Below are positions 7,080 through 64,000 of a DNA stretch of 64,000 nucleotides, one piece after another. Positions within the stretch are counted from its first letter, which is position 1. Every line of letters starts with the position of its first letter. Location of the stretch: positions 124,001 through 188,000 of IMG/VR virus record IMGVR_UViG_3300027996_002186. One strand, 5' to 3'. The notes beneath the pieces are model-generated. The model searched no databases and was not told the DNA's origin. It was given only the letters and a program-made list of their open reading frames with translations. A program made the translations under genes and the position numbers.

Positions 7080-8777
7080 ATGCCATCATATAATAACTTT
7101 AACGGAGCAGCAGGAGCAGATTCTAACTTCGCTGCTAGTAATTCAGCAGTTGAGAATAAAGGACTATTTAGTCGTATTCTAAGAAACCTTTCAAATTATG
7201 GTATGAACTATGATGATATGATCATCAGAAATCAAGTTGGTATCGGTATAAATGAGGATCCATATTCAGCTAGAGGTAATTCGATGTATGATTTCTTTAG
7301 TCAGAGAGCTGTGGCTTCTGTTTTGAATAGAAAGTCAATACCTTATCTAGATAAAGCATATGGTGATAAGAGAAGAATACTTAGAGAGTATTCTATTAAG
7401 GATGAAATAAGAGATTTTGTGAGTACTATATCGGATGAGTCTATTGTTTTTAATGATGATGTTGCCTTTTGCTCACCTAAATCACTATCAAATGAATATC
7501 CACAAGAAGTAAGAGATAAGTATCAAGAATATTTCGAAAAAATATACAATAAGTATGGATTTTCTGATGGTATTAGTGCTTGGGATATGATGAGAGATTT
7601 CCTTATTGATGGTTATATAGCTATTGAGATTATATATGATGATAAGAAAAAGAATATTGTTGGTTTCAATAGAATGAGACCAGAAACTTTAGTACCTGCT
7701 TATGAACCAGCTATTGGACACTTATGGATACAATTTCCAGAGGATCCACAATTAAGGAGAATATTTTTAGATTCACAAATAGTTTATATATCATATTCAA
7801 CACAGAATGATTATTCAGAAACTTCTTATGTTGAAGGTTTGATAAAACCATATAATCAATTAAAAATATTAGAACAAACTAGAATAATGTTCAATGTTAT
7901 AAACGCTACTCTTTATCAAAAATTTACAATTCCTATTAAAGGATTGTCTAGACAAAGAGCAGAAGAACAAATAGGTCAGTTAATACATGATTATTCAGAA
8001 GAAGTTGAGTGGGATGATAGTCTAGGAACACTTACTATCAATGGTGCTAAGCACTTACCTTACAATAAACAAATATGGTTTCCTGAGGGAGATGCTGGTA
8101 CTCCTAATATGGAGATGGTTTCACCAGAAGGTCATGATTTGAATGATGAAACTATGTTATCTTGGTTTTATAAGTCTCTTAAAAGAGCTTCTAAGATACC
8201 TATATCTAGATTCGAAGGTGAAAATGGTGGTGGTAACCTTTTTGGTGACGCTTCTGAGATGACTAGAGATGAGATTAAATTTCACAATTTTATTAGTAGA
8301 TTAAGAGCTAACTTTAAAGAACTTATTGTTAAGCCACTTAAATTACAAATGTTAATTGAGTTTCCTGAATTAACAGAGGATGAGGTATTTACTAATAGAG
8401 TTGATATTGACTTCTATACTAATCAAATATTTGAAGATTGGAAGAAGATAAATAACTTAGCTAAGAAATCAGAAATAGTTGGAACTTTATTAGGTGTTAT
8501 GAGAACAGATGAAAAACCTTATTTTCACATTGAGTGGATAATGGATAATATATTCAAGCTTACTCCAGAGGAGAAAGCTGAGAATGACAGGTATTGGGCT
8601 CGTGATGCTGGTGAAGGTGTTGGTTCTGGTGAAGAAGGCGCTGAAGGCGGAGATGATGGAGGCGACTTTGGTGAATCTGGTGATGTTGGTGGTGTAGATG
8701 ATGCTGGTGGTGGAGATGATGGTGGAGATGCTGGTGGAGATGCTGGTGGAGATGACGGTGGAGAATTTGAATTCTAA
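7080..8777 (+). CDS. gp20: Portal vertex protein (T4 gp20-like)
   Basis: FLIDG.IAIE, LIKPYNQLKILE, WFPEG, KSLKRASKIPISRF, TRDEIKFHNFI.RLR.NF; Gly/Asp-rich tail. Confidence 0.92.
   Translation: MPSYNNFNGAAGADSNFAASNSAVENKGLFSRILRNLSNYGMNYDDMIIRNQVGIGINEDPYSARGNSMYDFFSQRAVASVLNRKSIPYLDKAYGDKRRILREYSIKDEIRDFVSTISDESIVFNDDVAFCSPKSLSNEYPQEVRDKYQEYFEKIYNKYGFSDGISAWDMMRDFLIDGYIAIEIIYDDKKKNIVGFNRMRPETLVPAYEPAIGHLWIQFPEDPQLRRIFLDSQIVYISYSTQNDYSETSYVEGLIKPYNQLKILEQTRIMFNVINATLYQKFTIPIKGLSRQRAEEQIGQLIHDYSEEVEWDDSLGTLTINGAKHLPYNKQIWFPEGDAGTPNMEMVSPEGHDLNDETMLSWFYKSLKRASKIPISRFEGENGGGNLFGDASEMTRDEIKFHNFISRLRANFKELIVKPLKLQMLIEFPELTEDEVFTNRVDIDFYTNQIFEDWKKINNLAKKSEIVGTLLGVMRTDEKPYFHIEWIMDNIFKLTPEEKAENDRYWARDAGEGVGSGEEGAEGGDDGGDFGESGDVGGVDDAGGGDDGGDAGGDAGGDDGGEFEF
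8610..8774 (+). repeat. Low-complexity coding repeat (GGDA/GGDD units) at the portal C-terminus
   Basis: ggtggagatgct-type 12-mers. Confidence 0.8.
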
Positions 8778-11765: not shown

Positions 11766-13907
11766 ATGAAACCGGTTTTAATAGTAGAAAATTCACAAAA
11801 CCAACTTATTAGAGAGAGTAACTCTGCTAATAAGGGGTACACATTAGGTGGTACATTCACCGAATTCGGTGTCAAGAACAGAAATGAACGTATTTATTCG
11901 GCTGATAAATTTTTACCAGCATTGAATGAAATGAATGAACGTATAAGTGGCTTAGGTGCTGTTTATGGTGAATTCGATCATCCAGACGTTTTTGACACAT
12001 CACTCTCAAGAGCCTCGCATATTATCACAAAGGCAAGTTATATCCAAGAGAAAAATATCGTAGCGGGAGAGATTAAATTACTAAGTACTTACTGGGGTAA
12101 GGAAGCAAAAGCACTTGTCGATGACGGGTGTCCTGTATTCGTTTCTTCAAGAGCTGCTGGTATTACTGAATCTGATGGTTCAGTTTCCCTTAAAAAATTA
12201 TTTACTTATGACATTGTTGCTGACCCAGGATTTGCGTCAGCTAAAATGGATGTTAAGGTACTTAATGAGTCATTGGGATATAATGACGAAAAATCTAACT
12301 TTAGGATATATGAAATGTCCGATGAGTCAAAAATAAATGAGTTATTCAATATGAACAAAAATGAGTTTGTAACAAAAAAACAATTGACTGACTACTCTAA
12401 CTACTTAGTTAACGAATTAGCATCAACTAAGAAGACAGTTAATACAGCCATTACTAAAGGTAATGTAGCTCCAAAGAAATTGGAACAATTATTAGAGTAT
12501 TATGAAGAGTTAAACAACTCTAATTCAAAAGTAGCTAAGTATCTTGATTATTTATCAGAAAAGGTACAAATAGTAGTTAATGAGAATAAATCATTAAAGA
12601 AGACAACTGAGAAATTAGTTAAACATAATGATTATTTAGCAGAAAACTTAGAGAAATCTATTAATTACGCTGAGTATTTAGGTGAAAACTTAGATAAGAA
12701 CATTGATTATTCTGAGTATTTAGCTGAGAATTTAGACAAGAACATATCTTATGCTGAGTATTTAGCTGAGAATGTTGATAAAAACATTTCATATTCTGAG
12801 TATTTAGCTGAGAGTTTAGATAAGAACATTGCTTATTCTGAATATATCGCTGAGAATTTAGACAAAAACATCGCTTATTCTGAGTATATCGCTGAGAATT
12901 TAGACAAAAACATTGCTTACTCTGAGTATATCGCAGAAAACGTTGATAATAATATCGCTTATTCTGAATACTTATCTGAGCATGTTGAAGGTAACATTGC
13001 TTACTCTGAGTATATCGCAGAACATTTAGATGATAACATCGCTTATTCTGAGTATGTAGCAGAGAATCTTGACAAATCAATTAATTATCAAGGATTGATA
13101 GTTGAGAGATTAAACGGAGATAAATTATTTGAATCTGTTGAAGGATCTGAAAGCTTCCCATCTCTAGACGATGCTGGTTTTGAAGCTTTTGATGATGAAG
13201 AAAACAAAGATGAAGAAAATTGTAATCTTGAAGTATCATTAGATAATAATGATGAAGAAAATGGTGTTGAAGAATCTGTTGAGAATACAGATGATTACGC
13301 AACAGAAGAAAACAAAGATGAAGAAAATAAAGATGAAGAAAACAAAGAAGATAAAACTGAAAGCCATGATATGGTAAACGGTGATAGTGATTCTGAATTA
13401 TCTGAATCTATTGATAAACTAATTGAAGAAGCTAAAAAACGAAAAGTTTCTGAAACAACAGATGTGAATTTCTTGAAGTTCATGTCTAAATCACAAGTTG
13501 ACAGCTTTTACGCTTTGTCAAATGACGAACAAGAGTCAGTTAAAGTCCATATAAACGAAAGAGACTACTTTACTCAAAAAGATGTTTTGTTATTGATATC
13601 TGAAGCACTATCAACTAAGAACGAATCTCTTGAAGAGAGAATAATCAGATTGATGCCTGAAAACACAAAGCCAATCTGGGAACAATTAAACGACACTTCT
13701 AAGAAATCTATCTTGTCACAAGCTAGATTATATCCAGAAGACGTTTTAACTACTGAGGCACAAGTTGAACATTTTTGGTCAACTAGAAAGCTAAAGACAA
13801 ATGAGTCTGTAACAAAGAAACTTGTATCACATGAAAGCCTTATCCAAGAAGATAAACTTTCAGATAATGATGTTCAAGCGATAATGGAAAGATTCAAAAA
13901 TATTTAA
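11766..13907 (+). CDS. gp21: Prohead core protease (gp21-like) fused to scaffold protein (gp22-like)
   Basis: GVKNRNERIY, YGEFDHP, VSSRAAG, TYDIVADPGF, then coiled-coil 14-aa repeats and an acidic region; directly upstream of the MCP. Confidence 0.88.
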   Translation: MKPVLIVENSQNQLIRESNSANKGYTLGGTFTEFGVKNRNERIYSADKFLPALNEMNERISGLGAVYGEFDHPDVFDTSLSRASHIITKASYIQEKNIVAGEIKLLSTYWGKEAKALVDDGCPVFVSSRAAGITESDGSVSLKKLFTYDIVADPGFASAKMDVKVLNESLGYNDEKSNFRIYEMSDESKINELFNMNKNEFVTKKQLTDYSNYLVNELASTKKTVNTAITKGNVAPKKLEQLLEYYEELNNSNSKVAKYLDYLSEKVQIVVNENKSLKKTTEKLVKHNDYLAENLEKSINYAEYLGENLDKNIDYSEYLAENLDKNISYAEYLAENVDKNISYSEYLAESLDKNIAYSEYIAENLDKNIAYSEYIAENLDKNIAYSEYIAENVDNNIAYSEYLSEHVEGNIAYSEYIAEHLDDNIAYSEYVAENLDKSINYQGLIVERLNGDKLFESVEGSESFPSLDDAGFEAFDDEENKDEENCNLEVSLDNNDEENGVEESVENTDDYATEENKDEENKDEENKEDKTESHDMVNGDSDSELSESIDKLIEEAKKRKVSETTDVNFLKFMSKSQVDSFYALSNDEQESVKVHINERDYFTQKDVLLLISEALSTKNESLEERIIRLMPENTKPIWEQLNDTSKKSILSQARLYPEDVLTTEAQVEHFWSTRKLKTNESVTKKLVSHESLIQEDKLSDNDVQAIMERFKNI
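12627..13088 (+). repeat. 11 tandem 42-nt coding repeats (SEYIAENLDKNIAY consensus)
   Basis: 462 nt = 11 x 42, in frame, synonymous variation, no spacers. Confidence 0.92.
13305..13349 (+). repeat. 3 x 15-nt coding repeat (EENKD)
   Basis: gaagaaaa(c/t)aaagat units. Confidence 0.8.
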
Positions 13908-13992: not shown

Positions 13993-15723
13993 ATGTCACA
14001 CATTAGAATAGACAAACAAAAAGCTATGAAGAAATGGTCTCCAGTATTAGAGAACATGGGAGTTGCTGGTGAAGATAGATTGGATTGGATGTCAGAATAT
14101 GCTGAATTTCACTCAATCAATGAAAACGCTTACGCAAACGCTTCAAACGTATCGGGTATGGGAGCTGTAGTAGCTGCACAACCTAATTCATTAGCTGGTA
14201 ACACAATTGGCAATTACGCTGACTCAACTGGTTCAGGTGATGTTGGTCAAAACCTTTTACCGGTAGCGATGAAAATAGCAGCTCAAACAATCGGTTTAGA
14301 TTTAGTAGCTGTTAAACCTTCTCCAGGTCCAAAAATTGATTTATTATATATCGACTTTAGATATGATGATGCTCATTTAGGAGATTCAGACGAAAGACCA
14401 CAAGTCTTTAAGATTGCACCAAACGCTACATTTTTAACTACTGGTGCTGGTGGTATGACAGCAGTTATCGCTGGATTAAGAGCTCAATTAGCTACGAATA
14501 CAATCACTGAAACAGTTGGTGGTTTAACTGGTAGAATGTGGAATGATATCACAGATGGTTCAGATGTAGTTGTAGAACCAACACCTTCAAAAGAAGGAAA
14601 AGTTGAATTTTTAGGATTCTCTAGAATTGATGGTTATCCAATGTTCAGAGCTTACAGACAGATGAATACATCTCACACAGATGTTGGTTCAGCTCAAGCA
14701 AACTGGGGATTTGACCCGACTAGAAACACATTTAGTCCTACAATGTCAATGGCTTCTCAAATTACTGATTTAGGAGATGTTACTTTAACTGATGAGCCTA
14801 CTATTGAATTAGTATCAGCTCTTGAAGATCACATTCCTGGTTTCTCTGCAAACTGGATGTCGGATGCTACTGGCCCTGCTGGTAACTATCCAATGGATAG
14901 AGAAATGGACGATAAAAGATACTCTGGTATCATCGGACCAAAAATTAGTTCTAAAACAGTTGCCGTAGGTACTATTGAAGTATCTTCAGCTCTTAGAAGA
15001 ACTGAAATTGAAGATATCAAAGCTAACACTGGTATGGATATCGTTCAAAAAATGGAGTCAATTCTTGTTAATGAATTATCTCAAACAATCTCTAAGCAAA
15101 TTGTTGCTAAGATATTTGAAATGGGTTCACTTAACAGATTATCTGCACCAGCTTATGTTGGAACAGCACCGGCACCATTAGCGGGACAAACAATCTTTGA
15201 CTTAAACACAGCTTATGCAACTGTTGCTGCTGGTAATGGAAACGTTGGTGGTGAAACTACACACGCTGTTCAAAGAAAGCTTGTAACTAAGATAGCTCAC
15301 GCTTCTAACTACATCGCTACAGAGGGACGTGTTGGTCCAGCTCAATACCTTATTACAAATGGGGGATTAGCAGCAGCACTTTCTGATATCTCTGGTTATA
15401 CAATTAACCCAGTGAAATCAAAAATCAATGGTCAAGGTCAATTATACCCAGTAGGTTCAATTGGAGATATTTCAATATATGTTGATCCATATATGAGATA
15501 TAACGACAATAGAATTGCTCTTGGTAGAAAGAACAATCCAGATCAACCAGGTATTATTTTTGTACCTTACTTAATGGCTCAGTCTATATCTGTAATTTCT
15601 GAAGCGACTTTCGCTCCTAGAATGTTACTAAGATCTAGATACGCTGTAACAGAAGTTGGTTGGTTCCCACAAAAACAATTTATGACTATCGAAGTTACAG
15701 ATGTGAATACACTTCTTAACTAA
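13993..15723 (+). CDS. gp23: Major capsid protein (T4 gp23-like)
   Basis: KKWSPVLE, IAAQTIGLDLVAVKP, ILVNELSQTISKQIV, IYVDPY, FVPY, TFAPRMLLRSRYA; follows protease/scaffold. Confidence 0.92.
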   Translation: MSHIRIDKQKAMKKWSPVLENMGVAGEDRLDWMSEYAEFHSINENAYANASNVSGMGAVVAAQPNSLAGNTIGNYADSTGSGDVGQNLLPVAMKIAAQTIGLDLVAVKPSPGPKIDLLYIDFRYDDAHLGDSDERPQVFKIAPNATFLTTGAGGMTAVIAGLRAQLATNTITETVGGLTGRMWNDITDGSDVVVEPTPSKEGKVEFLGFSRIDGYPMFRAYRQMNTSHTDVGSAQANWGFDPTRNTFSPTMSMASQITDLGDVTLTDEPTIELVSALEDHIPGFSANWMSDATGPAGNYPMDREMDDKRYSGIIGPKISSKTVAVGTIEVSSALRRTEIEDIKANTGMDIVQKMESILVNELSQTISKQIVAKIFEMGSLNRLSAPAYVGTAPAPLAGQTIFDLNTAYATVAAGNGNVGGETTHAVQRKLVTKIAHASNYIATEGRVGPAQYLITNGGLAAALSDISGYTINPVKSKINGQGQLYPVGSIGDISIYVDPYMRYNDNRIALGRKNNPDQPGIIFVPYLMAQSISVISEATFAPRMLLRSRYAVTEVGWFPQKQFMTIEVTDVNTLLN

Positions 15724-20931: not shown

Positions 20932-21136
20932 TAATACATTCCAGGTGAATTCGGCTTCTAATAAAAATGCTATTGTGGTTGATCCAGATGGATACACAAC
21001 TATTGATAAATTAATACTTGTTGATCAAAAAGATGGAACTAAGTGGGATTTTTCAATTTATGATGGTGAGGTATTAGTTGAGCCACATGGTAAATCAGAA
21101 AAAAGAGAATATAGAATCAATAAGGTTATTTCTTAA
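20915..21136 (+). CDS. Small hypothetical protein with C-terminal REYRINKVI motif
   Basis: ORF coupled to the MCP paralog. Confidence 0.65.
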   Translation: MAQQINNTFQVNSASNKNAIVVDPDGYTTIDKLILVDQKDGTKWDFSIYDGEVLVEPHGKSEKREYRINKVIS

Positions 21137-21584
21137 TTAATTTAATCTTTAAGTTACCATTTCCTTTTATTAGTCTATGATAAACACCCATAGGTATTTC
21201 TACAATACCCTCAATTACTTTTGGAAGTTGATTATCGATTTGAATCATCCAATCAGTTTCATTTATAGACTCTATAATTCTATCTTCTCTATCACGATGC
21301 CAAATAAATTCACCTGAATCAGTTTCTTGTTTAAATTCTCTGATAAATGTATTCTCTGATAACTGTTCTTCAATAAATGGTAATACAACGTCTGGGTTTT
21401 CATTTTGCCATTCTTTCAAAGCTTTCATATCAAATTCTTTTAATTCATTATCATATCCACATTGGTGACATAAATATTTTCTATCATCATTTATTTCAAT
21501 TTCCCAATTCCAATCACAGTTATCACAAGTAATTTCTTTGATTTTAGCGATTTCGAATATTTTATATGTTTCTAAGTGTTTCAT
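21126..21584 (-). CDS. CTS-tagged protein: Zn-ribbon (CDNC...CHQC) plus cupin-like C-terminal domain
   Basis: MKHLETYKIFE; WHRD.EDR and IPMGVYHRLIKG suggest a cupin fold. Confidence 0.6.
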   Translation of the reverse strand: MKHLETYKIFEIAKIKEITCDNCDWNWEIEINDDRKYLCHQCGYDNELKEFDMKALKEWQNENPDVVLPFIEEQLSENTFIREFKQETDSGEFIWHRDREDRIIESINETDWMIQIDNQLPKVIEGIVEIPMGVYHRLIKGNGNLKIKLIKK

Positions 21585-21604
21585 TTATTATAAATACTAA
21601 TATT

Positions 21605-22174
21605 TTACCAATACCCAGGGTAGGTTCGCCCATTCCAAAGATGTCCGTATTTCGTGAGACGACAAGCCCAATATCCAGCAGTTGTTCTATCCTTTTTGGT
21701 TGAGCATTTATGTCTAGCCGCGAAGCTCTTTCTAGCATCTGGGTTACTAACTTTAGCTGTTAGTCCACCATGTACATCTCCAAAGGCAAGTTTTTTAACA
21801 TTACCAGTCTTTGGGTTTTTAACATAAACGTGATATTTCTTAGTCCCGCCTCTTTTAGGATAATTTAATTTAACTTCTTTACCCTTATACTCTGCTTCAT
21901 TTAATTCTTGAATATTTTCTATTGGTAAATCAAGTGGTACTAATTCATTATTAAACACTCCGAACCTACCAATATCTGTTGATTCGAATAATTCATTATC
22001 TATATCACACAATTCAACAGTATTAGAATCGAATAACTTTCTAGCTTCTTTTATTACTTCATAAAAAGCATCTGAACCAGGTCTAAAAACATTTTCAGTT
22101 ATAGGTTTAGAACTATCTAAATGGTATTTTAGATTCTCTGATATTTCTTTATATTGATTAAATTTGTGTATCAT
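21605..22174 (-). CDS. CTS-tagged protein with basic C-terminal domain (RKSFAARHKC...GYWAC)
   Basis: MIHKFNQYKEISE; several [LIF]-x-E sites precede the basic domain. Confidence 0.65.
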   Translation of the reverse strand: MIHKFNQYKEISENLKYHLDSSKPITENVFRPGSDAFYEVIKEARKLFDSNTVELCDIDNELFESTDIGRFGVFNNELVPLDLPIENIQELNEAEYKGKEVKLNYPKRGGTKKYHVYVKNPKTGNVKKLAFGDVHGGLTAKVSNPDARKSFAARHKCSTKKDRTTAGYWACRLTKYGHLWNGRTYPGYW

Positions 22175-22590
22175 TCTTCTACTTCATTTTCACCATCACT
22201 TGTAAATTCAGAGAAGTTAATAACACCAACACCATCACTCTCAACACATTCGCATCCGGGGCATCCACATTCACAGCCAGCTTCTCCGGTGCAATTATCA
22301 CAACAAGCACAATCTCCTGATAAAGTTTCATCACTTTCTTCTTCTAATTCATTCTCCATATCAATATTCTCAATATTCTCAATATTATCGATGTTAATCG
22401 TTATGAAGTTTTCAAACTTAACAATCTTATCCATTTCTTTTTTAAATGCCTTATCAACCTTTTCTTGGTCCTCAACAGATGTTGTGAATCCAGGTTCAAC
22501 ATCTTTATCAACTAGTTCTTTAGCATCAAATGTAATTTCTTGTGTTTCTTCTTCTTTTTTGGCTTCATTAAACCTTTTAATCTTTTTCAT
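22171..22590 (-). CDS. CTS-tagged acidic protein with metallothionein-like Cys cluster
   Basis: MKKIKRFNE; CACCDNCTGEAGCECGCPGCEC. Confidence 0.7.
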   Translation of the reverse strand: MKKIKRFNEAKKEEETQEITFDAKELVDKDVEPGFTTSVEDQEKVDKAFKKEMDKIVKFENFITINIDNIENIENIDMENELEEESDETLSGDCACCDNCTGEAGCECGCPGCECVESDGVGVINFSEFTSDGENEVEE

Positions 22591-22598
22591 AGTTTTAA

Positions 22599-22805
22599 TT
22601 ATTTCTTTTGGTACATTCCTTCCAGTACTTGGTACATAGCATCAACAACTCCATAAGAGTCAACTCCGAAGTCACCTTCATATTTTTCAGCAATTGAGAT
22701 TATATCCTTTTCAAGTTCTTCCCATTTATCTCCAGATCTTTGTTTTTTTAGAACATCATCCCAATTAAACTCTTCACTTTCGTTAAATTTCTTTAAGTGT
22801 TTCAT
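22599..22805 (-). CDS. CTS-tagged small protein
   Basis: MKHLKKFNE. Confidence 0.7.
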   Translation of the reverse strand: MKHLKKFNESEEFNWDDVLKKQRSGDKWEELEKDIISIAEKYEGDFGVDSYGVVDAMYQVLEGMYQKK

Positions 22806-35130: not shown

Positions 35131-35580
35131 ATGGGATTTAAAAAGTTAGTTAATTACTACGTATTACGCAAATCTTTAAAAGAAATCGAGATGAATAGAA
35201 TTTTAGAAAAAATATACAAGAAAATAAAAATTTCTACTAAAGAAAAGAAATTTTTGGATTTATATAATCGTACTACCGAAGAGGTTGCTAAGGATTTGAT
35301 GTTCTTGTCTAAAAATGCAACTTCTAGAAAGGTTAAAGAAATATTAGAAAGAGGTAAGAAAGTCATTTGTGATTTACATGATAGGGATGGTAAAATTGGA
35401 CTTGAGATACTTAGTATTGAGAATAATGTCGATTCTGTTACATGTGATGTTATTATGAGAAATGAGACACATCAATTACATGATAGATTTTTATATAATA
35501 TTATTTATAATAATATAAAAAAAGAGTATTCATTACAAGAACAAGACGAATATTATGAAAAAATAGAAGCTACGAAATGA
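35131..35580 (+). CDS. Hypothetical protein with DUF6576-like segment
   Basis: MNRILEKI......TKEKKFL. Confidence 0.65.
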   Translation: MGFKKLVNYYVLRKSLKEIEMNRILEKIYKKIKISTKEKKFLDLYNRTTEEVAKDLMFLSKNATSRKVKEILERGKKVICDLHDRDGKIGLEILSIENNVDSVTCDVIMRNETHQLHDRFLYNIIYNNIKKEYSLQEQDEYYEKIEATK

Positions 35581-35849
35581 TAAAGAAATTTAAACAATTT
35601 AATGAAGAAATATCTGGTACTGAATTGGTTGGTCCTATTGGTCCTGCTTATGGTGAGACGGGGTTACAGAATAAAACCATAAATTCACATGACACAAATG
35701 TTATTTATTCAGAGATGGATTCTAAGATATATACAATAGATGAATATAATGATATTTATGGTGAGTACCTTAAATTTGGTGGATCTCCGTTAGATGGATT
35801 TACAAAAGAAAATATAGATATAATATTGGATTTTTTACAAACTAATTAA
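35577..35849 (+). CDS. CTS-tagged small protein
   Basis: MIKKFKQFNEE. Confidence 0.7.
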   Translation: MIKKFKQFNEEISGTELVGPIGPAYGETGLQNKTINSHDTNVIYSEMDSKIYTIDEYNDIYGEYLKFGGSPLDGFTKENIDIILDFLQTN

Positions 35850-46883: not shown

Positions 46884-47279
46884 ATGAAATATTTAAAGAC
46901 GTTTGAAAATTACTCTCCAGTAAATGAAGAGGAAGAAGGAATAAGAAAGTTCTTTACTGGTCATGACAGTAGTGATGATAGAGATAAGGCTATGGTAGCT
47001 TTCAATAAAGCTTTAGATGATGCTGAAGAAGCTGCAAATAAAAATCCAAAGGGTTATTCGTTTAACAGAGAACGTTTAGAAAAAGAAGCTAGTGAAAATA
47101 ACTATAAAGGTGGATTAAGAATCCAAAGAGGTGGTAGAAAAGACAGATCACCCGGTCAAGCATCCGCTAATTCGAGTAGAATGTACGTTGTTTATGACGA
47201 TGGTGTTACTGGATTTGTAGATGTGTTTGTAAAACCAGCAGCTGCTAATAGAAAAGATAGTGGATTTAATAGACCATAA
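46884..47279 (+). CDS. CTS-tagged protein
   Basis: MKYLKTFENYSPVNE. Confidence 0.75.
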   Translation: MKYLKTFENYSPVNEEEEGIRKFFTGHDSSDDRDKAMVAFNKALDDAEEAANKNPKGYSFNRERLEKEASENNYKGGLRIQRGGRKDRSPGQASANSSRMYVVYDDGVTGFVDVFVKPAAANRKDSGFNRP

Positions 47280-52124: not shown

Positions 52125-52466
52125 TTATTTCTTTTCTATTGTTACTTCATAATAAGTACCATTTCTACCACCTACACTAAGTACTGGAAATTTCTCTTTC
52201 ATTTCTTTGAGAATTTCCTCATCAAAAGGCATATATACATAAAAAGCTTCTTTACCATCATTTTTCCATCCATCTCCATTCCAAATGAATGCTGTTTTAT
52301 CTGACCCAGGATCACTTACACCCTTGAACTTTTTACCTAAATCATGACCCTCATTACCTGAGTTGATATCTTTAACTTCTAAATCATTGTTTTGTAAGAA
52401 GGATTTAGCCATGTCAATTTCTTTAGATTCTACACTTTCGTTAAATTTTAACCAATTCTTAATCAT
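52125..52466 (-). CDS. CTS-tagged small protein
   Basis: MIKNWLKFNE. Confidence 0.7.
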   Translation of the reverse strand: MIKNWLKFNESVESKEIDMAKSFLQNNDLEVKDINSGNEGHDLGKKFKGVSDPGSDKTAFIWNGDGWKNDGKEAFYVYMPFDEEILKEMKEKFPVLSVGGRNGTYYEVTIEKK

Positions 52467-52939
52467 TATTTCTTTTTCTTTTTAGCTAAGATTGCTTTTT
52501 GTAATCCAGCTGGAAGTTTCTTTTGACCCGCAGTTAATCCTTTGGTATCTACTTTATCTTCCTTCTTATCTTCCTTCTTATCTTTAGTATCTTTCTTACC
52601 TTTAACATCTTTCTTATCATCCTTATCAACATCTTTACCTTCTTTTTTCTTACCTTTTTGTTTATCTAAGTAAGCTTTTAACCCAGCGTTCATGCCTTTT
52701 TTCTCAACTACTTGTGATTCTTCGTCACCCCAGAGTCTTATTTTTCTTTGGTTTTCTTTTTCTTCTAAATCTTCTTCTTCTTCATCTGATACGGAACCTA
52801 ACTGTCCTTCAAAATCTTCAATACCTTCAACATCATCGATTAAATCTGTATTTTCTTCTTCCGGATTGATATCATCTTCATTATTAAATCTACCAAGATC
52901 TCTAGGATCGTAGTTTTCAAATTTCTTTAGGTATTTCAT
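52466..52939 (-). CDS. CTS-tagged protein: acidic N-half, Lys-rich C-half (possible DNA-binding internal protein)
   Basis: MKYLKKFEN; KKDxK repeats; KLPAGLQKAILAKK; TTAATATATA (minus) at 52963-52972. Confidence 0.7.
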   Translation of the reverse strand: MKYLKKFENYDPRDLGRFNNEDDINPEEENTDLIDDVEGIEDFEGQLGSVSDEEEEDLEEKENQRKIRLWGDEESQVVEKKGMNAGLKAYLDKQKGKKKEGKDVDKDDKKDVKGKKDTKDKKEDKKEDKVDTKGLTAGQKKLPAGLQKAILAKKKKK

Positions 52940-58918: not shown

Positions 58919-58920
58919 GC

Positions 58921-58971: not shown

Positions 58972-58997
58972 ATATAGAAATTAGAAACGAATAAAAA

Positions 58998-59069: not shown

Positions 59070-59084
59070 CTATTATTATAATAA

Positions 59085-59298
59085 GCAAACATAGCGATAG
59101 TTTGAGATACTTCGAGATCTAAATGATCAACTATGAAAAAAAGTGATTAGCGACAGCGAATCTACCAAAACACTATAAAGTAGTTGAGGTGAAAAAGTCC
59201 GAGTGACTACGTAAAGGTCAAAGTGAGATGGTCACTTAAACTATCGGCGAATATTCTCACGAATCTTCGTAGCGCTTCGGCTAAATTTTCTTGTTTGC
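59085..59298 (+). ncRNA. Y-RNA-like RNA 2 (long, 214 nt)
   Basis: Terminal stem gcaaaca/tgtttgc; TAGCGA; 12-bp stem cgatagtttgag/cttaaactatcg followed by ATACTTCGA; multi-hairpin insert. Confidence 0.7.
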
Positions 59299-59309
59299 AA
59301 ATATTATAT

Positions 59310-59355
59310 AAAAGACCAGATTAACTACAAATGTAGAGAGTCTGGTCTTTTTTTT
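59310..59355 (+). terminator. Terminator-like hairpin between the Y-like RNAs and Ro60
   Basis: aaaagaccaga/tctggtctttt plus inner ctac/gtag and a long T-run. Confidence 0.8.
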
Positions 59356-59384: not shown

Positions 59385-60836
59385 ATGTCAAAATTTAACA
59401 CAACAATGCCAAAGGCAATAACAAAGACTTCCAATTTAGCTGGTGGGGAATCTTATTCACAATCTAATGAGTTAGTGTTGGTTTCGCTATTATTAACATC
59501 ATTTGTTAATACTCAATTTTATAGAGATGGTGGTAATTCTTTAGTAGATTTGAAAAATATTTCTGAGAAGGTTAAGGATAAAGAGTTTGTTGCGAAAGCT
59601 GCTATATTTGCTCGTGACCGTTTCGGGATGAGAAGTATTACTCACGCTTTAGCTGGTGAATTGACTTCACAACTTACTGGTCAAGAGTGGGCTAAGGATT
59701 TCTACGAGAAAGTGGTTGTTCGTGTTGATGATATGACAGAAATATTATCTTACTACTTAGAAAACAAAACATCTAAAGATAATCCAAAGTTTCCAAATGC
59801 TTTGAAGAAGGGATTTGCGAAGGCTTTTGATAAATTTGATGGATATAATCTATCTAAGTATAAAGGTGAGAATAAGGAAGTGAAGTTAGTTGATATTGTG
59901 AACTTAGTTCACCCTGTTCCGACTTCTAGAAATAAAGAAGCGCTTGAGTCACTTATCAGAGGTGAGTTGAAAAACACACAAACTTGGGAAGCTAAGTTAT
60001 CTGAAGCTGGTCAAAAGGCTGATTCTAAGGAAGATTTGGAAAAATTAAAATCAGATGCTTGGGGAGAGTTAATCTCAACTGGTAAGATTGGATATTTCGC
60101 TCTTTTGAGAAACTTGAGAAATATTATAACTCAATCACCTACTTCTATTAAGGAAGCTTGTGAGATGTTAGTTAATGAAAAGTTAATCAAGAAGTCAAGA
60201 ATTCTTCCATTCCGTTTCGCTACGGCTTATGAGGAAATCAATAAGATTGGTTCTTCTAAGGATGTCAGAGATGTACTTATTGCTCTTAATCAAGCACTTG
60301 ATATATCAGTAGCTAACGTTCCTAAGTTCGAAGGAGAAACACTTGTAGTTATGGACGTTTCAGCTTCTATGAGGGGTATAGCATCTGACACGGCTTCTTT
60401 ATTCGGTGCAATTCTATCAAAGGTTAATAACTGTGATGTTATGACATTTGCTAGAGAAGCTAACTATATGGCATATAATCCAATGGATTCTGTGTTAACT
60501 ATTAGAGATGGTTTTAGATTTGCTGGTGGTGGAACAAACTTTAAGTCAATTTTCACAACTGCTAACAAGAAGTATGATAGAATAATAATTCTTTCAGATA
60601 TGCAAGGATGGGTTGGTTATACTACACCATCTGATGAATTTAACCAATATAAGAATATGTTTGGTGCTACACCATTCGTTTATTCTTGGGATCTCGCTGG
60701 GTATGGTACATTGCAGTTCCCAGAAAATAATGTCTTTGCTTTAGCCGGATTTTCCGATAAAGTATTCGATATTATGAAGTTGATGGAGGTCGACAAAAAG
60801 GCTCTCTTCAATGAGATAAAGTCTATCCAGCTTTAA
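59385..60836 (+). CDS. rsr: Ro60/Rsr TROVE-vWA ribonucleoprotein
   Basis: NLAGGESY, ARDRFGMRS, RVDDMTEIL, IGYFALLRNLRNI, ILPFRF, MIDAS DVSASM, GGTNF, LSDMQ. Confidence 0.93.
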   Translation: MSKFNTTMPKAITKTSNLAGGESYSQSNELVLVSLLLTSFVNTQFYRDGGNSLVDLKNISEKVKDKEFVAKAAIFARDRFGMRSITHALAGELTSQLTGQEWAKDFYEKVVVRVDDMTEILSYYLENKTSKDNPKFPNALKKGFAKAFDKFDGYNLSKYKGENKEVKLVDIVNLVHPVPTSRNKEALESLIRGELKNTQTWEAKLSEAGQKADSKEDLEKLKSDAWGELISTGKIGYFALLRNLRNIITQSPTSIKEACEMLVNEKLIKKSRILPFRFATAYEEINKIGSSKDVRDVLIALNQALDISVANVPKFEGETLVVMDVSASMRGIASDTASLFGAILSKVNNCDVMTFAREANYMAYNPMDSVLTIRDGFRFAGGGTNFKSIFTTANKKYDRIIILSDMQGWVGYTTPSDEFNQYKNMFGATPFVYSWDLAGYGTLQFPENNVFALAGFSDKVFDIMKLMEVDKKALFNEIKSIQL

Positions 60837-60839
60837 CAA

Positions 60840-60880
60840 AAACACACTTCTTTGAAGTGGGTTTTTTGTTTTAATATATA
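60840..60880 (+). terminator. Terminator hairpin (60840-60867) followed by late promoter TTAATATATA (60871-60880)
   Basis: cacttc/gaagtg stem plus T-run; exact decamer. Confidence 0.65.
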
Positions 60881-60901
60881 CAAAAAAGAAATATAAATAT
60901 T

Positions 60902-61201
60902 ATGGCTATTAAAAAATTTAATGAAGCTTGGGATGAGAATTCTGGTGAGTATGTTGATTACAATGGATATATAGATCAACACGGAGAATTTGGTGATATA
61001 CATGATTCTTTAGGATCGAGTAAATATGGTGTGGGTGAGTTTAATAATATGATGGCTGAGTTAAATGTTAATGAAAATGAATTACCACAAGAATTGATTG
61101 ATATGATAGAAGATATCAGAGGTGATTTAGGTGGAATCAAAGGTAAAATAGTAGATTTATTCTCGGCCTTAACAAAAGAAGATATGTCATATTTAAAATA
61201 A
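60902..61201 (+). CDS. CTS-tagged acidic protein
   Basis: MAIKKFNE. Confidence 0.75.
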   Translation: MAIKKFNEAWDENSGEYVDYNGYIDQHGEFGDIHDSLGSSKYGVGEFNNMMAELNVNENELPQELIDMIEDIRGDLGGIKGKIVDLFSALTKEDMSYLK

Positions 61202-61524
61202 TGAAACATTTGAAAACATTTAATGAGGGAAATTTACCAGAAAGAGAGGTAGTTTTTACTAATAAGAGAAATAGACATATGGTTTTTTCTGTGTTTAAAA
61301 CTCCTGATGGTAAAATAACAAGAATCGAAAAATTACCAAATATTAGATTCCCTTTTCAAGTAGGTCAACTATTTAATAGAACTATTGAAGTATGGGCTTG
61401 TAATAATAATTACCTAATGGATGGTAAAGATACTTGTCCTGAGAAAAAGATTATGGGTATGAGAGCTTCTGATATACCAAAGGGTCATGAACTAAGACAC
61501 ATATTCCCACATAAATTCAAATAA
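61201..61524 (+). CDS. CTS-tagged protein
   Basis: MKHLKTFNE. Confidence 0.75.
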   Translation: MKHLKTFNEGNLPEREVVFTNKRNRHMVFSVFKTPDGKITRIEKLPNIRFPFQVGQLFNRTIEVWACNNNYLMDGKDTCPEKKIMGMRASDIPKGHELRHIFPHKFK

Positions 61525-61544
61525 TAAAATTAATATATAGAATA

Positions 61545-61829
61545 ATGAAACATTTAATAAAATTTAATGAGGGTGTTATAGGTAGAAGTGATGATGATTT
61601 TGATCCACCTAAATCTAAGTGTCCTAGTTACGAAGAAGCTTTAGAAAAAATGTGTAAATATATAGCAGATCAGATATACGGTGATTATATGGATGGATCT
61701 ATGAATCCTAGTTATGATGGTCAGTCAGGTTGTGAAGATACATTATCAATATTATATGGTGTTAGTAGGAAGAAGGTACGTAGGGATGTTGATACTATCA
61801 TCGAAGAATACAGAACAGGAAAAAGATAA
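61545..61829 (+). CDS. CTS-tagged protein
   Basis: MKHLIKFNE; TTAATATATA at 61530-61539. Confidence 0.75.
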   Translation: MKHLIKFNEGVIGRSDDDFDPPKSKCPSYEEALEKMCKYIADQIYGDYMDGSMNPSYDGQSGCEDTLSILYGVSRKKVRRDVDTIIEEYRTGKR

Positions 61830-61837
61830 TTATAATT

Positions 61838-62245
61838 ATGAAATATTTAAGAAAATTTAACGAAGAATTAGAGAGTGAGGGATTAGATACTATCAATGAT
61901 TTGAAAGAAATATTTGAAAATGGTATTAATGTTCCGGTATTCTTAGAAGATTTATTATCTGGTACAGGTATTATACTTGTAACAACAGAGGGTAAGGTAT
62001 TTGAAAAATCAAAATCAGGAGAATGGAAAGAATATGAATCACCAGAAGCATTTAAAAATGAGACAGGTGCTTCTTTGGACGAAGAATATGTAGGTAGTAA
62101 AAGTCAACAATTGTTGAATTTAATAACTGGTGCCGATGGTGAGTATGATGGTATTGATGATTATAGAGTAGGTTATATAGAATCAATTTATTTTGATGAT
62201 GAGCCAACTGATATGTTAAAAAAATTATTAAGAAATTATGATTAA
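61838..62245 (+). CDS. CTS-tagged protein
   Basis: MKYLRKFNE. Confidence 0.75.
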   Translation: MKYLRKFNEELESEGLDTINDLKEIFENGINVPVFLEDLLSGTGIILVTTEGKVFEKSKSGEWKEYESPEAFKNETGASLDEEYVGSKSQQLLNLITGADGEYDGIDDYRVGYIESIYFDDEPTDMLKKLLRNYD

Positions 62246-62729
62246 AAAGTGGAAACAATTCGTTAATGAATCAAATAGTGATTATAGTTTATTGAACTTC
62301 TTTCAGGAGATGCAATCATTTCCAGCGGCGGGAGTAGATAAACAAGACATTGAAGAAGCGTCTAAACCTGTGAATAAAATGAAGACAGTTAGTAATGTTC
62401 CTGAACTTCAAGGATTGTTAGATGATTGGAGTGGTGGGAAGTATGATGAAGATCCTGGATATTTAGTAAATGAATTAAGAGGTTTACTTGAGAGTAATAA
62501 AATTGATGAGAATCTATCAGCAGAATTAGATAAAGAAACAATATTACATATTTTAAATTTGAAAGTTAAAGAAGGTCTAAATAAGAAAGTAAATTATGAA
62601 TTATGGGATTTTGATGATGCCTACAAAGGTGTCTCTGATGGTGGTACAGTAAATGCTTATAAATCTGGTAGAAAAAAAGCTTTTAAGGAAGTTTTGGATA
62701 TGATAAATGATTTTGATAAAAATAAATAA
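62238..62729 (+). CDS. CTS-tagged protein
   Basis: MIKKWKQFVNE. Confidence 0.75.
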   Translation: MIKKWKQFVNESNSDYSLLNFFQEMQSFPAAGVDKQDIEEASKPVNKMKTVSNVPELQGLLDDWSGGKYDEDPGYLVNELRGLLESNKIDENLSAELDKETILHILNLKVKEGLNKKVNYELWDFDDAYKGVSDGGTVNAYKSGRKKAFKEVLDMINDFDKNK

Positions 62730-62735
62730 AGAAAG

Positions 62736-63176
62736 ATGATTAAAAAGTGGAGTCAATTTAACGAAAGTAAAGCAGAGAAACCAGGTGAAAATATACCGGG
62801 TTCTGTTAAGGTAAATTTAACTGATGAGGATGTTAACGCATTTACAGATAACACATCTTTACAAAAATTAATTTCTGATGATAAAGTTGCATTACTTGAT
62901 GGAGAAGCTTGGTATTGGGAAGATGATATGACTACTAAAGGTATTTTAGATCAATATTTAGAAATACCTGGTACTGTTGAAGAAGAACCAACTGGAGATT
63001 TAGTTAGTGAGAATTTTCAATGGTCGGATGATGAAATCAATAAATTAGAAATAGATATTCATGATGAGATTGCTAAAGGTATGACTAAGGAAGAATTTTT
63101 AGAATATTCTTCTAGTTACTCTTTTGGTATGGGTGAGGTTTTTGAAGTATTGAAAAAGTGGGCTTTTAGACCTTAA
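62736..63176 (+). CDS. CTS-tagged protein
   Basis: MIKKWSQFNE. Confidence 0.75.
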   Translation: MIKKWSQFNESKAEKPGENIPGSVKVNLTDEDVNAFTDNTSLQKLISDDKVALLDGEAWYWEDDMTTKGILDQYLEIPGTVEEEPTGDLVSENFQWSDDEINKLEIDIHDEIAKGMTKEEFLEYSSSYSFGMGEVFEVLKKWAFRP

Positions 63177-64000
63177 TTATCTTTTAAGATTTTCCCAAAG
63201 TATTTGATAGATATCATCTATTTTATTATACTTTATTCTAATTAAATTAATATAATTATCTTCACAGTAATTCTTCTTAATTTTATCTATTTCCCTTATC
63301 CTATTTAGTGTTTTTAATCCCCCAAACTCATCTATTGGTTCAAAATGATGTCTACCATCAAATTCTATTATTGTTCTTGTTTTTGGTAGATAATAATTAA
63401 ATATTAAACCATCTATGTTGTGGTTTTTATAATACCTTATGTCATTTTCATCTAAGAAATGTGATATATAATTCATATACTTAAATTCATCACATTTTTT
63501 ACAACCTATTCCGTAATTTAAGTGTGTATATGCCCTTTGTATAAAGGAACCGTGTATAGGACACAAAACTTCTATATGTGAGTTTATATTTTTATATTCA
63601 TTTACATTTATAATGTATTTATATTTAAAATTGTGTGTTATTTGACACTTGGATATTAGTTCATTTATTTTATTTTCTCTTGTTTTCTTATAAACTTTAA
63701 CCTTTGGTTGCTTCGCCTTTTTTGCTTCTGTGAGAGAGTAATATTCTGCTAATATATTTTCTATGTTTTTATAATCGGTGAATTTTATCCTCAATAAATC
63801 TATTTTATTATCGGTACAAAACTTATTTTTAATATTATCTCTTATTTGTGTTTCCTTTAACTTTTTGATACCACCCCATGTTTCTATTATTTCCGAGTGT
63901 TGTGGTCCATCATATTCTATACAAGAATTGAATTTGGGTATATAAAAATCAAATTTTAAGTTTTTTTTATATTCACACCCCTCAAATTCCTTTTGTGATA
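63177..64000 (-). CDS. Homing-endonuclease-like protein with two tandem PD-(D/E)xK (Vsr/DUF559-like) modules; 5'-truncated by the window edge
   Basis: Frame stays open to the window end: LKFDFYIP...CIEYDGPQH...RIK, then CPIHG/GCKKC Zn motif and IFNYYLP...IIEFDGRHH...RIK. Confidence 0.75.
   Translation of the reverse strand, partial: SQKEFEGCEYKKNLKFDFYIPKFNSCIEYDGPQHSEIIETWGGIKKLKETQIRDNIKNKFCTDNKIDLLRIKFTDYKNIENILAEYYSLTEAKKAKQPKVKVYKKTRENKINELISKCQITHNFKYKYIINVNEYKNINSHIEVLCPIHGSFIQRAYTHLNYGIGCKKCDEFKYMNYISHFLDENDIRYYKNHNIDGLIFNYYLPKTRTIIEFDGRHHFEPIDEFGGLKTLNRIREIDKIKKNYCEDNYINLIRIKYNKIDDIYQILWENLKR

What the first reader, a model, noticed from the sequence alone, without database searches (positions are those of the whole stretch)
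60902..63176. Cassette of six tandem, mutually dissimilar tagged genes right after Ro60
Seen: six ORFs of 94-163 aa, similar only in their first 8-11 residues, tightly packed behind two late promoters and bounded by a convergent endonuclease gene. Inference: a variable cargo locus where new domains are recruited behind the loading tag, like the hypervariable T4 IPI locus that encodes anti-restriction proteins.
Basis: partly seen in the sequence, partly recalled or inferred. Interest (0 to 1): 0.6.

Follow-up and report, generated by a model that had tools for sequence, protein, structure and literature searches.

The report
Leader-tagged variable gene cassette in megaphage
Six small, unrelated genes behind the Ro60 gene of a marine giant phage all start with the same 9-12-residue leader, which heads about a tenth of the genes in this phage clade and most likely works like phage T4's capsid-loading tag, though that function is untested.

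Summary
Six tightly packed + strand ORFs (99, 107, 94, 135, 163 and 146 aa) lie at 60902-63176. They resemble each other only in residues 1-10/15, and a run of six has permutation p = 0.003.

- **Variable locus:** in the 634-kb relative LR745206, genes 1 and 4 are missing. Genes 3 and 5 keep only the leader, and gene 6 has a different C-terminus.
- **Not special to this locus:** the leader (M-K-[YH]-[LI]-[KR]-x-[FY]-[NE]-E, or MIKKWxQFNES) heads 19 of 88 ORFs on this contig. It heads 8-12% of ORFs in related megaphages and occurs in at least 119 IMG/VR stretches.
- **Phage-specific:** it is essentially absent from 596 Gb of cellular genomes.
- **Behaves as a modular peptide:** it is selected at the amino-acid level, is poorly modelled in two predicted structures (unstructured in gene 2), and can be swapped or lost.

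The phage has a T4-type portal, a prohead protease fused to a scaffold, and a gp23-like capsid protein. The leader resembles the T4 tag MKTYQEFIAE and ends in a hydrophobic-x-Glu site. A capsid-loading leader is therefore the best mechanism (about 0.4).

Against it: no virion data exist, 65-80 genes per genome carry the leader, and the cargo is acidic, unlike T4's basic internal proteins.

The parts
59385..60836 (+). Ro60 (TROVE + vWA) gene, upstream neighbour of the cassette
   Evidence: Pfam TROVE E = 2.4e-18; PHROG 850 E = 2.9e-41
60845..60869 (+). Terminator-like hairpin plus T run that separates Ro60 from the cassette
   Evidence: Terminator scan; sequence
60872..60899 (+). TAATATATA box (60872-60880) and T4-late-like TATAAATA (60892-60899) ahead of gene 1
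   Evidence: In LR745206 the box lies within 60 nt upstream of 46% of tagged ORFs against 13% of untagged ORFs
60902..61201 (+). Gene 1: 99 aa, degenerate leader MAIKKFNE, pI 4.2. Absent from LR745206
61201..61524 (+). Gene 2: 107 aa, leader MKHLKTFNE, basic (pI 9.9). Conserved family of 74 clusters; fold has no match
61531..61539 (+). Second TAATATATA box, 5 nt before the gene 3 ATG (spacing that would suit a leaderless transcript)
61545..61829 (+). Gene 3: 94 aa, leader MKHLIKFNE. Only the first 19 codons are shared with LR745206
61838..62245 (+). Gene 4: 135 aa, leader MKYLRKFNE. Elsewhere its body occurs behind a type-A leader, a type-B leader, no leader, or leader plus adaptor domain
62238..62729 (+). 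Gene 5: 163 aa, leader MIKKWKQFVNES. Its C-terminal half is a module that occurs elsewhere behind the gene-6-type domain (P0102)
62736..63176 (+). Gene 6: 146 aa, leader MIKKWSQFNES, then a conserved ~85-aa domain ending ..EIPGxVEEEP, then a variable C-terminal module
63177..64000 (-). Convergent homing-endonuclease-like gene (runs off the window; 627 aa on the contig)
   Evidence: PHROG 559 E = 1.8e-50 and PHROG 9084 E = 3e-34
21126..22805 (-). Another array of four leader-tagged genes (MKHLETYKIFE, MIHKFNQYKE, MKKIKRFNEA, MKHLKKFNES)
52125..52939 (-). Pair of leader-tagged genes (MIKNWLKFNES, MKYLKKFENY)
35577..35849 (+). Single leader-tagged gene (MIKKFKQFNEE)
46884..47279 (+). Single leader-tagged gene (MKYLKTFENY) with a TAATATATA box at 46851
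7080..8777 (+). T4-type portal protein (gp20)
   Evidence: Pfam Portal_T4 E = 2e-56
11766..13907 (+). Prohead protease (S77-like, PHROG 207) fused to a scaffold-like tail with about 12 tandem 13-aa repeats NIAYSEYIAENLDK. This is the candidate enzyme and receptor for the leader
13993..15723 (+). Gp23-type major capsid protein. Its N-terminus ..AMKKWSPVLEN.. and conserved ..SINEN.. resemble the leader and its hydrophobic-x-Glu end

Best explanation
**Shown.** The six ORFs are genuine accessory genes of a marine Mahaphage-clade megaphage whose genome is at least 551 kb. They form one of many arrays of genes built as leader + linker + unrelated small domain.

The leader is 9-12 residues long. It reads M-K-[Y/H]-[L/I]-[K/R]-x-[F/Y]-[N/E/D]-E-[S..], has a longer form ..Y-K-[I/L]-F-E-S, and a one-residue-shifted form M-I-K-K-W-x-Q-F-(x)-N-E-S. 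Its properties are:
- It is conserved as a peptide, not as DNA.
- It always sits at the extreme N-terminus.
- It is poorly modelled in both predicted structures: unstructured in gene 2, a low-confidence short helix in gene 6.
- Its two forms are interchangeable on the same protein body.
- It can be lost from a body altogether.

The genes behind it turn over quickly, and the recombination junctions lie at or just after the leader.

**Inferred.** The leader is a phage-specific sorting signal equivalent to the T4 capsid targeting sequence. It would dock the proteins onto the scaffold core built by the protease-scaffold fusion while the gp23-type shell assembles. The T4-type prohead protease would then clip it after the hydrophobic-x-Glu at its end (F-N-E or I-F-E). 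The mature, mostly acidic cargo would stay in the head and be injected with the DNA. There it would act at the very start of infection, in counter-defence or host takeover. The variability of the cassette would reflect an arms race.
For: - **Genes and leader are real.** establish the ORFs, the leader-only similarity and the non-random run.
- **The leader is genome-wide and enriched at N-termini.** In LR745206, 65 of 923 ORFs carry it, against 0.33% of internal Met positions. Taking only ORFs that start MK[YH][LI] (78 of 923), position 5 is K/R in 77% and position 7 is F/Y in 90%. LR756502 has 80 pattern hits against 1 for the control.
- **It is phage-specific.** IMG/VR gave at least 119 stretches against 11 for a reversed-peptide control. 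Of 90 matches, 85 start an ORF of 50 aa or more. A scan of 596 Gb of cellular genomes gave only 29 stretches. More than half lie in one MAG that also carries this phage's protease-scaffold (62% identity) and capsid protein (73%), so it is a mis-binned relative.
- **Selection acts on the peptide.** Synonymous codon use inside the leader is close to the genome-wide pattern.
- **It is modular.** Leader residues have pLDDT about 50, unstructured in gene 2 and a short helix in gene 6. The leader stays at the extreme N-terminus when 30-80-aa inserts follow it. The two forms are swapped, or the leader is absent, on the same body.
- **The locus turns over.** On this contig, 8 of 15 tagged genes keep an orthologue in LR745206, against 65 of 73 untagged genes (p = 0.003).
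- **The head machinery is T4-type.** The window encodes a portal, an S77-like protease and a Gp23-type capsid protein. The scaffold repeats ..YSEYIAE|N.. and the conserved capsid-protein motif ..INE|N.. show candidate hydrophobic-x-Glu cleavage sites like the end of the leader.
- **It matches T4 precedent.** The T4 tag is MKTYQEFIAE and is cleaved once next to the tag (PMC8442874). T4 internal proteins share only that leader and sit in a diversifying hotspot (PMC12373910 and PMC3012670). T4-family proteases all cut after Glu (PMC5694885).
Against: - No proteomic, cleavage or packaging data exist, because the phage is uncultured.
- 65-80 or more tagged genes per genome is far more than the 3-10 internal proteins of T-even phages.
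- Tagged proteins are acidic (median pI 4.9 against 5.6 for untagged, p = 6e-7; five of the six here have pI 4.1-4.9). T4 internal proteins are highly basic.
- A few tagged proteins carry domains that look cytoplasmic (NUDIX, NFACT-R, MazE-like).
- The 735-kb relative LR756501 has the same scaffold repeats but almost none of the common leader form. It has only a small MIKK[FY]xxF set. Cultured relatives with the same capsid-protein type lack the leader.
- In the F-E-x-[FY] variants the Glu is not in a hydrophobic-x-Glu register.
- Hydrophobic-x-Glu is a weak motif in this AT-rich proteome.
Confidence: 0.4

Rival explanations
1. The leader is a docking or sorting peptide for some other phage-specific partner, not the capsid. 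Candidates are a phage chaperone or hub protein, a timed-degradation protease (degron), or a phage-built compartment. The cargo proteins would act inside the infected cell after normal synthesis.
For: - The same modularity, peptide-level selection and phage specificity fit this reading.
- The large number of tagged genes (8-12% of ORFs) and their acidity fit soluble early effectors better than DNA-associated head proteins.
- Presence of the leader is not coupled to the scaffold repeats. LR756501 has the repeats but few leaders.
Against: - No candidate partner was identified.
- The resemblance to the T4 tag, and the hydrophobic-x-Glu end in a phage with a T4-type protease, would be coincidence.
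Confidence: 0.25
2. The leader is mainly an expression element. It would be an AT-rich, unstructured start of the coding region that gives efficient initiation or early elongation in a host without Shine-Dalgarno use. Initiation would often be on leaderless or very short-leader mRNAs, and the peptide itself would have no role.
For: - No Shine-Dalgarno sequence precedes any of the six genes.
- All leader residues use AT-rich codons.
- In LR745206 a TAATATATA box lies within 60 nt upstream of 46% of tagged ORFs against 13% of untagged ORFs. A sharp spacing class at 4-6 nt before the ATG covers 84 genes, many with leader-like N-termini.
Against: - Synonymous sites are free, and substitutions are conservative at the amino-acid level (K/R, L/I/V, F/Y). 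For example, position 7 is F/Y in 90% but almost never Leu, which is one base away.
- Half of the tagged genes have no box. Four of the six here are operon-internal with overlapping or abutting stops.
- The capsid protein and most other genes do without it.
Confidence: 0.15
3. The leader is a relic and a tool of recombination. Genes would arise by duplication and shuffling at a short conserved 5' sequence, comparable in role to the mobile regulatory cassettes of T4-type phages. The shared N-terminus would be carried along without a function of its own in the protein.
For: - Homology breakpoints between the window and LR745206 sit at or just behind the leaders.
- Contigs of other loci in metagenomes match only the leaders.
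- Tagged genes cluster in arrays.
- A homing-endonuclease-like gene abuts the cassette.
Against: - A neutral relic would not keep its amino-acid pattern across relatives whose capsid proteins are only 36-78% identical while synonymous sites drift.
- 27-36 nt at about 80% identity is a poor substrate for homologous recombination.
- The two leader forms are swapped on one body, which points to selection for having a leader at all.
Confidence: 0.1

Closest known systems
T4 internal proteins IPI/IPII/IPIII with the capsid targeting sequence (CTS, MKTYQEFIAE)
   Same: - A leader of about 10 residues at the extreme N-terminus is the only similarity between otherwise unrelated small proteins.
- The pattern M-K-x-hydrophobic-x-x-F...E is shared.
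- The genes sit in variable loci.
- The same genome has a T4-type portal, prohead protease and gp23-like capsid protein.
   Different: - The sequence is different.
- There are 65-80 or more genes per genome instead of 3-10.
- The cargo is mostly acidic rather than basic.
- There are three leader registers (short, long, shifted).
- Packaging and cleavage are not shown.
Propeptide-bearing ejection and inner-body proteins of giant phages phiKZ, 201phi2-1 and SPN3US
   Same: Many head-internal proteins are processed after Glu by a T4-related prohead protease. Paralogues have conserved N-termini and diverged bodies (PMC5694885).
   Different: Those propeptides are mostly over 100 residues and family-specific. 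They are not one short universal leader, and the cleavage motif there is A/S/G-x-E.
Mobile promoter/stem-loop cassettes (PeSL) that mediate modular shuffling in T4-type phages (recalled from memory: Arbiol, Comeau and Krisch 2010)
   Same: A short repeated sequence at gene starts coincides with the junctions of gene shuffling in variable regions.
   Different: Here the repeat lies inside the coding sequence and is conserved as a peptide. Only 2 of the 6 genes have an upstream box, and there are no intergenic stem-loops.
Polymorphic toxin/effector architecture (conserved N-terminal part, fixed junction motif, swappable C-terminal modules)
   Same: - The gene 6 family has an invariant leader plus a ~85-aa domain ending ..EIPGxVEEEP.
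- At least 8 unrelated C-terminal modules follow that junction.
- The bodies of genes 4 and 5 occur as such modules in other phages.
   Different: No toxin or immunity domain was recognised. The proteins are phage-encoded and very small, and no secretion system is implied.

Membership tests
T4 internal protein / CTS system | Short N-terminal leader as the only similarity among otherwise unrelated proteins | tested here: met
   BLASTP among the six proteins finds similarity only in residues 1-10/15. The same holds genome-wide.
T4 internal protein / CTS system | Leader homologous to the T4 CTS MKTYQEFIAE | tested here: inconclusive
   The skeleton M1-K2-x-hydrophobic4-x-x-F7...E9/10 is shared, but only 3-4 of 10 residues are identical. 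That is too short for a homology test.
T4 internal protein / CTS system | T4-type head assembly machinery (gp20 portal, gp21-type protease, gp23 capsid protein) in the same genome | tested here: met
   Portal_T4 E = 2e-56. Gp23 E = 2.7e-26. PHROG 207 head maturation protease E = 1.6e-30; the Pfam S77 match is only sub-threshold.
T4 internal protein / CTS system | Leader removed by the prohead protease after Glu | not testable with these tools
   The sequence is compatible: F-N-E or I-F-E at the leader end, and YIAE|N scaffold repeats. No cleavage data exist. The complex prediction gave no verdict.
T4 internal protein / CTS system | Proteins present inside virions and injected with the DNA | not testable with these tools
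   The phage is uncultured and no proteome is available. Cultured phages with a related capsid protein lack the leader.
T4 internal protein / CTS system | Genes in hypervariable loci with the leader retained | tested here: met
   Comparison with LR745206 and 12 further Ro60 loci. Orthologue loss is 7 of 15 for tagged genes against 8 of 73 for untagged genes.
T4 internal protein / CTS system | Highly basic, DNA-associated cargo encoded by a handful of genes per genome | tested here: not met
   Five of the six proteins have pI 4.1-4.9. Median pI of tagged proteins is 4.9. There are 65-80 or more tagged genes per genome.
PeSL-type mobile regulatory cassettes | Repeated non-coding promoter plus stem-loop between the shuffled ORFs | tested here: not met
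   Only 2 of the 6 genes have a TAATATATA box. The only hairpin in the cassette region is the one behind Ro60. The repeated unit is coding.
Polymorphic toxin/effector systems | Conserved N-terminal part, fixed junction and unrelated C-terminal modules | tested here: met
   Gene 6 family alignment A3. Modules are shared with genes 4 and 5.
Polymorphic toxin/effector systems | C-terminal modules are toxins paired with immunity genes | tested here: inconclusive
   No Pfam or PHROG toxin or immunity match for any of the six proteins. No fold match for gene 2.

The most novel reading that the evidence does not exclude
The leader is a universal address label of a megaphage clade. It would load some 70-100 different, rapidly exchanging effector proteins per genome into the capsid for co-injection, or into a so far unknown phage-specific compartment. 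Either would be by far the largest and most modular pre-packaged effector arsenal known in any phage. The leader would also be a one-line sequence rule for finding such effectors in metagenomes.
Probability: 0.3. Interest if true: 0.85.

Novelty: new variant of a known kind. Interest (0 to 1): 0.63.

Why it matters
If the leader is a loading or sorting signal, a simple sequence rule would pick out hundreds of candidate injected or early effectors in uncultured megaphages. These would be natural candidates for counter-defence proteins. It would also show that the T4 strategy of leader plus exchangeable cargo has been scaled up roughly tenfold in the largest known phages.

The leader could serve as a portable tag for loading foreign proteins into such capsids, as the T4 tag already does.

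Even if the mechanism differs, a phage-specific N-terminal peptide on about 10% of a proteome is an unexplained and testable regularity. The full-text searches run here found no description of it.

Tried and rejected
**Searches that gave no function**
- Pfam and PHROG scans of the six proteins gave no significant family. The best were SFV1_VP5 at E = 0.013 and RraB at E = 0.11, both below cut-off.
- The gene 2 model (pLDDT 81) has no fold match. Foldseek against PDB and BFVD gave E > 0.3, and VIA-align wide gave a best Z of 4.3.
- The 'atlas' fold library was not available.
- The ESM Atlas search for gene 4 gave no usable hit.
- The gene 6 model was too poor (pLDDT 62) to search.
- The complex prediction of protease-scaffold with gene 2 returned no verdict (score 0.00). 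It is not evidence either way.

**Relatives and literature**
- Cultured phages with a related capsid protein (Tenacibaculum PTm1 and pT24, Flavobacterium MaF61, Chryseobacterium MA9V-2, Sphingomonas PAU) and Lak phage have only 0-3 loose pattern hits each. Their virion proteomes therefore cannot be used.
- A widespread tagged family (MKYLKRFNEELKPQTY..) has no relative in cultured phages.
- Full-text searches for leader strings and for 'Mahaphage' found no description of the leader.

**Ideas rejected**
- That the leader is a host-type sorting signal: it is absent from cellular genomes.
- That the TAATATATA box marks late genes only: the box also precedes the portal gene, and its shorter AATATATA form precedes the protease and RNR genes.
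- That the tag depends on leaderless starts: half of the tagged genes lack the box.

**Other**
- Rfam at gathering thresholds and a tRNA scan of the whole window found nothing.
- Laying reads gave only short contigs. There was no structural variant of the cassette in three seawater runs. One near-identical 277-nt contig over gene 5 came from a metatranscriptome, which is weak evidence of expression.
Full report
**1. Observation**

The region 60902-63176 holds six ATG-started ORFs on the + strand, of 99, 107, 94, 135, 163 and 146 aa. They are packed with spacers of -8 to +20 nt and have no Shine-Dalgarno sequences.

All-against-all BLASTP finds similarity only in the first 9-15 residues. Without those residues nothing scores better than E = 0.018. 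None of the six has a significant Pfam or PHROG match.

Upstream lies a Ro60 (TROVE/vWA) gene, closed by a terminator hairpin at 60845-60869. Downstream lies a convergent homing-endonuclease-like gene. Two TAATATATA boxes (60872 and 61531) and one TATAAATA (60892) precede genes 1 and 3. A run of six tagged genes is unlikely by chance (p = 0.003).

**2. What genome this is**

The window is part of a 76.9-kb contig. The exact gene 6 protein occurs on 65 contigs, the longest 551,101 bp. Three IMG/VR contigs of 154-483 kb carry the identical locus.

The nearest GenBank records are the 634-kb and 642-kb 'uncultured phage' genomes LR745206 and LR756502. These are the Mahaphage-clade genomes, predicted to infect Bacteroidetes (PMC7162821).

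The cassette's sampled 31-letter words are fully present in nine marine or seawater metagenome runs from at least six studies. This is therefore a marine megaphage.

The window also encodes a T4-type portal, a prohead protease fused to a long scaffold-like tail, and a Gp23-type major capsid protein.

**3. The leader is not special to this cassette**

On this contig, 19 of 88 ORFs start with it. In LR745206:
- 65 of 923 ORFs match a strict pattern, against 0.33% of internal Met positions.
- Tagged genes cluster. 25 have a tagged neighbour against 8.7 expected.
- In an unbiased count, 78 of 923 ORFs start MK[YH][LI]. Within that set position 5 is K/R in 77% and position 7 is F/Y in 90%.
- The leader ends either in ..F-[N/D/E]-E or in a longer ..Y-K-[I/L]-F-E-[S/N].

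In 400 kb of LR756502, 72 of 582 ORFs start MK[YH][LI]. That genome has arrays of up to nine consecutive tagged genes.

In 85 of 90 cases it starts an ORF of at least 50 aa.

In 596 Gb of bacterial and archaeal genomes it finds only 29 stretches. More than half lie in one MAG that also carries this phage's protease-scaffold (62% identity) and capsid protein (73%), so it is a mis-binned relative. The leader is therefore specific to this phage clade and is not a host signal.

It is nearly absent from several related phages:
- The 735-kb LR756501 has only a small MIKK[FY]xxF set.
- Lak phages lack it.
- Cultured jumbo phages with a related capsid protein lack it.

**4. The leader behaves as a modular peptide**

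- Synonymous codon use inside it is close to the genome-wide pattern. The substitutions are conservative at the amino-acid level.
- In the gene 2 model (pLDDT 81), residues 1-10 have pLDDT 52 and no secondary structure. In the gene 6 model (pLDDT 62) the leader is also poorly modelled, with pLDDT about 50 and one short helix.
- In the gene 2 family (74 clusters) the leader stays at the extreme N-terminus even when 30-80-residue inserts follow it.
- The gene 4 body occurs in five contexts: behind the MKHLKKFNE form, behind the MIKKWNKFNES form, with no leader, behind an unrelated ~80-aa N-terminal domain, and behind leader plus the gene-6-type domain.
- Gene 6 relatives have an invariant leader and a ~85-aa domain ending ..EIPGxVEEEP, followed by at least eight unrelated C-terminal modules. 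One of those modules is the C-terminal half of gene 5.

Genes 4, 5 and 6 thus belong to one combinatorial system of leader, optional adaptor domain and exchangeable module.

**5. Variability**

Against LR745206 (82% nt identity over the shared parts):
- Gene 1 is absent.
- Gene 2 is 92% identical.
- Homology ends 59 nt into gene 3.
- Gene 4 is absent.
- Only the 37-nt leader of gene 5 matches, and a different 113-aa gene follows it.
- Gene 6 matches for 86 codons only.

In relatives whose Ro60 is 77-80% identical, the space behind Ro60 holds unrelated minus-strand genes, some with leader-like starts. Within the marine population the cassette is invariant.

Across the contig, 8 of 15 tagged genes keep an orthologue in LR745206, against 65 of 73 untagged genes (p = 0.003).

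**6. Most likely mechanism**

T4 internal proteins share nothing but a leader of about 10 residues, MKTYQEFIAE. That leader targets them to the prohead core and is clipped once by the prohead protease. The proteins are injected and block restriction systems, and their loci diversify (PMC8442874, PMC3012670, PMC12373910, PMC5694885).

The leader found here has several matching features:
- It has the same length, position and skeleton (M-K-x-hydrophobic-x-x-F...E).
- It ends in hydrophobic-x-Glu, the type of site cut by T4-family proteases.
- The phage's own protease carries about 12 scaffold repeats NIAYSEYIAE|NLDK. Each repeat contains such a site and itself resembles the T4 tag.
- The capsid protein has a conserved ..INE|N.. 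and an N-terminal ..MKKWSPVLEN.. that resembles the MIKKWSQFNES form.

I infer that the leader loads the proteins into the prohead and is then removed. This step is inferred, not shown.

**7. Against this mechanism**

- The number of tagged genes is about ten times that of T-even phages.
- The cargo is acidic (median pI 4.9 against 5.6 for untagged, p = 6e-7). T4 internal proteins are basic (PMC8442874).
- Of 65 tagged proteins in LR745206, only five match a Pfam domain (NFACT-R, M15 peptidase, NUDIX, DUF6576, MazE-like).
- LR756501 keeps the scaffold repeats with few leaders.
- The F-E-x-[F/Y] variants do not place Glu in the expected register.

The complex prediction gave no verdict.

**8. 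Rival explanations**

- **(a) Docking or degron peptide for another phage-specific partner.** This has the same support from modularity and fits the numbers and acidity better, but no partner is known.
- **(b) Expression element.** The TAATATATA box lies upstream of 46% of tagged ORFs against 13% of untagged ORFs. It has a sharp spacing class 4-6 nt before the ATG, which would suit leaderless mRNAs. However, synonymous sites are free, half of the tagged genes lack the box, and four of the six genes here are operon-internal.
- **(c) Recombination relic.** Junctions sit at the leaders, but the amino-acid pattern is kept over deep divergence.

Recombination at the leaders is probably a by-product that speeds up cassette exchange. 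The adjacent homing-endonuclease-like gene may add to local turnover; that is inference only.

**9. Novelty and verdict**

The T4 paradigm is known. A different leader on 8-12% of the genes of the largest known phages, with interchangeable forms and an adaptor-plus-module layer, was not found in the literature searched. I rate it a new variant of a known kind. Confidence is 0.4 for capsid loading. Confidence is high, about 0.9, for the descriptive claim of a modular, phage-specific N-terminal leader on fast-evolving cargo.

Noticed in passing
window 58920-59353 (intergenic between RNR and Ro60): This non-coding stretch is strongly conserved among relatives whose Ro60 is only 65-84% identical. 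RNAalifold gives a long hairpin (58999-59070, CCAGUAGUGA...CCUCUGG) with at least 6 compensatory pairs. It also gives a long-range helix GCAAACA/UGUUUGC (59085/59292) closing a branched domain, and a terminator at 59312-59353. There is no Rfam hit. It is a candidate Y-RNA-like partner of the phage Ro60.
   Followed up: partly
window 11766-13907 (residues about 290-450): The prohead protease is fused to a scaffold-like tail with about 12 tandem 13-residue repeats NIAYSEYIAENLDK. These are conserved in LR756502, LR756504 and LR756501. Each repeat resembles the T4 CTS (TYQEFIAE) and contains an I/L-A-E site.
   Followed up: partly
LR745206 genome-wide (L002-L033); window 61531-61547: AATATATA boxes (mostly TAATATATA) lie upstream of 177 ORFs with bimodal spacing to the ATG. 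84 genes have spacing of 4-7 nt, which would give leaderless or near-leaderless mRNAs, and about 79 genes have spacing of 15-32 nt.
   Followed up: partly
window 56326-58869 versus L001 5514-6090: The class I ribonucleotide reductase gene between the 300-aa acidic protein and Ro60 is present here and in the relatives with 77-80% Ro60 identity. It is missing at this position in LR745206.
   Followed up: no
gene 6 family (alignment A3); window 62736-63176: A fixed junction ..EIPGxVEEEP separates a conserved N-terminal domain from at least 8 unrelated C-terminal modules. This resembles the demarcation motifs of polymorphic toxins. The bodies of genes 4 and 5 are among the modules.
   Followed up: partly
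L241-L266, G001 contig C59: The MAG labelled 'Candidatus Muiribacterium halophilum bin 137' holds many contigs with arrays of up to five leader-tagged genes per 8 kb. It also holds a protease-scaffold (62% identity) and capsid protein (73%) of this phage clade. It most likely contains a mis-binned megaphage.
   Followed up: partly
LR756501 (L191-L210): The 735-kb relative lacks the common leader but has at least 12 ORFs per 400 kb starting MIKK[FY]xx[FY]. Several of these are followed by a DPYGEE(xW) motif.
   Followed up: no
window 9280-11184 (-), 15798-16187 (+), 4462-5310 (-): The window has an RNA-centred gene content around the head module: an RNase II/R-type exoribonuclease (RNB, E = 1e-110) and a small NFACT-R domain protein with a leader-like start just after the capsid protein gene. 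A gene with a class I tRNA-synthetase-like N-terminus is my reading of its start sequence and was not scanned. Ro60 adds to this.
   Followed up: no
L174 7001-8450: In one otherwise identical IMG/VR contig the Ro60 reading frame is split into 129-aa and 223-aa pieces. This is either an assembly error or a disrupted variant.
   Followed up: no
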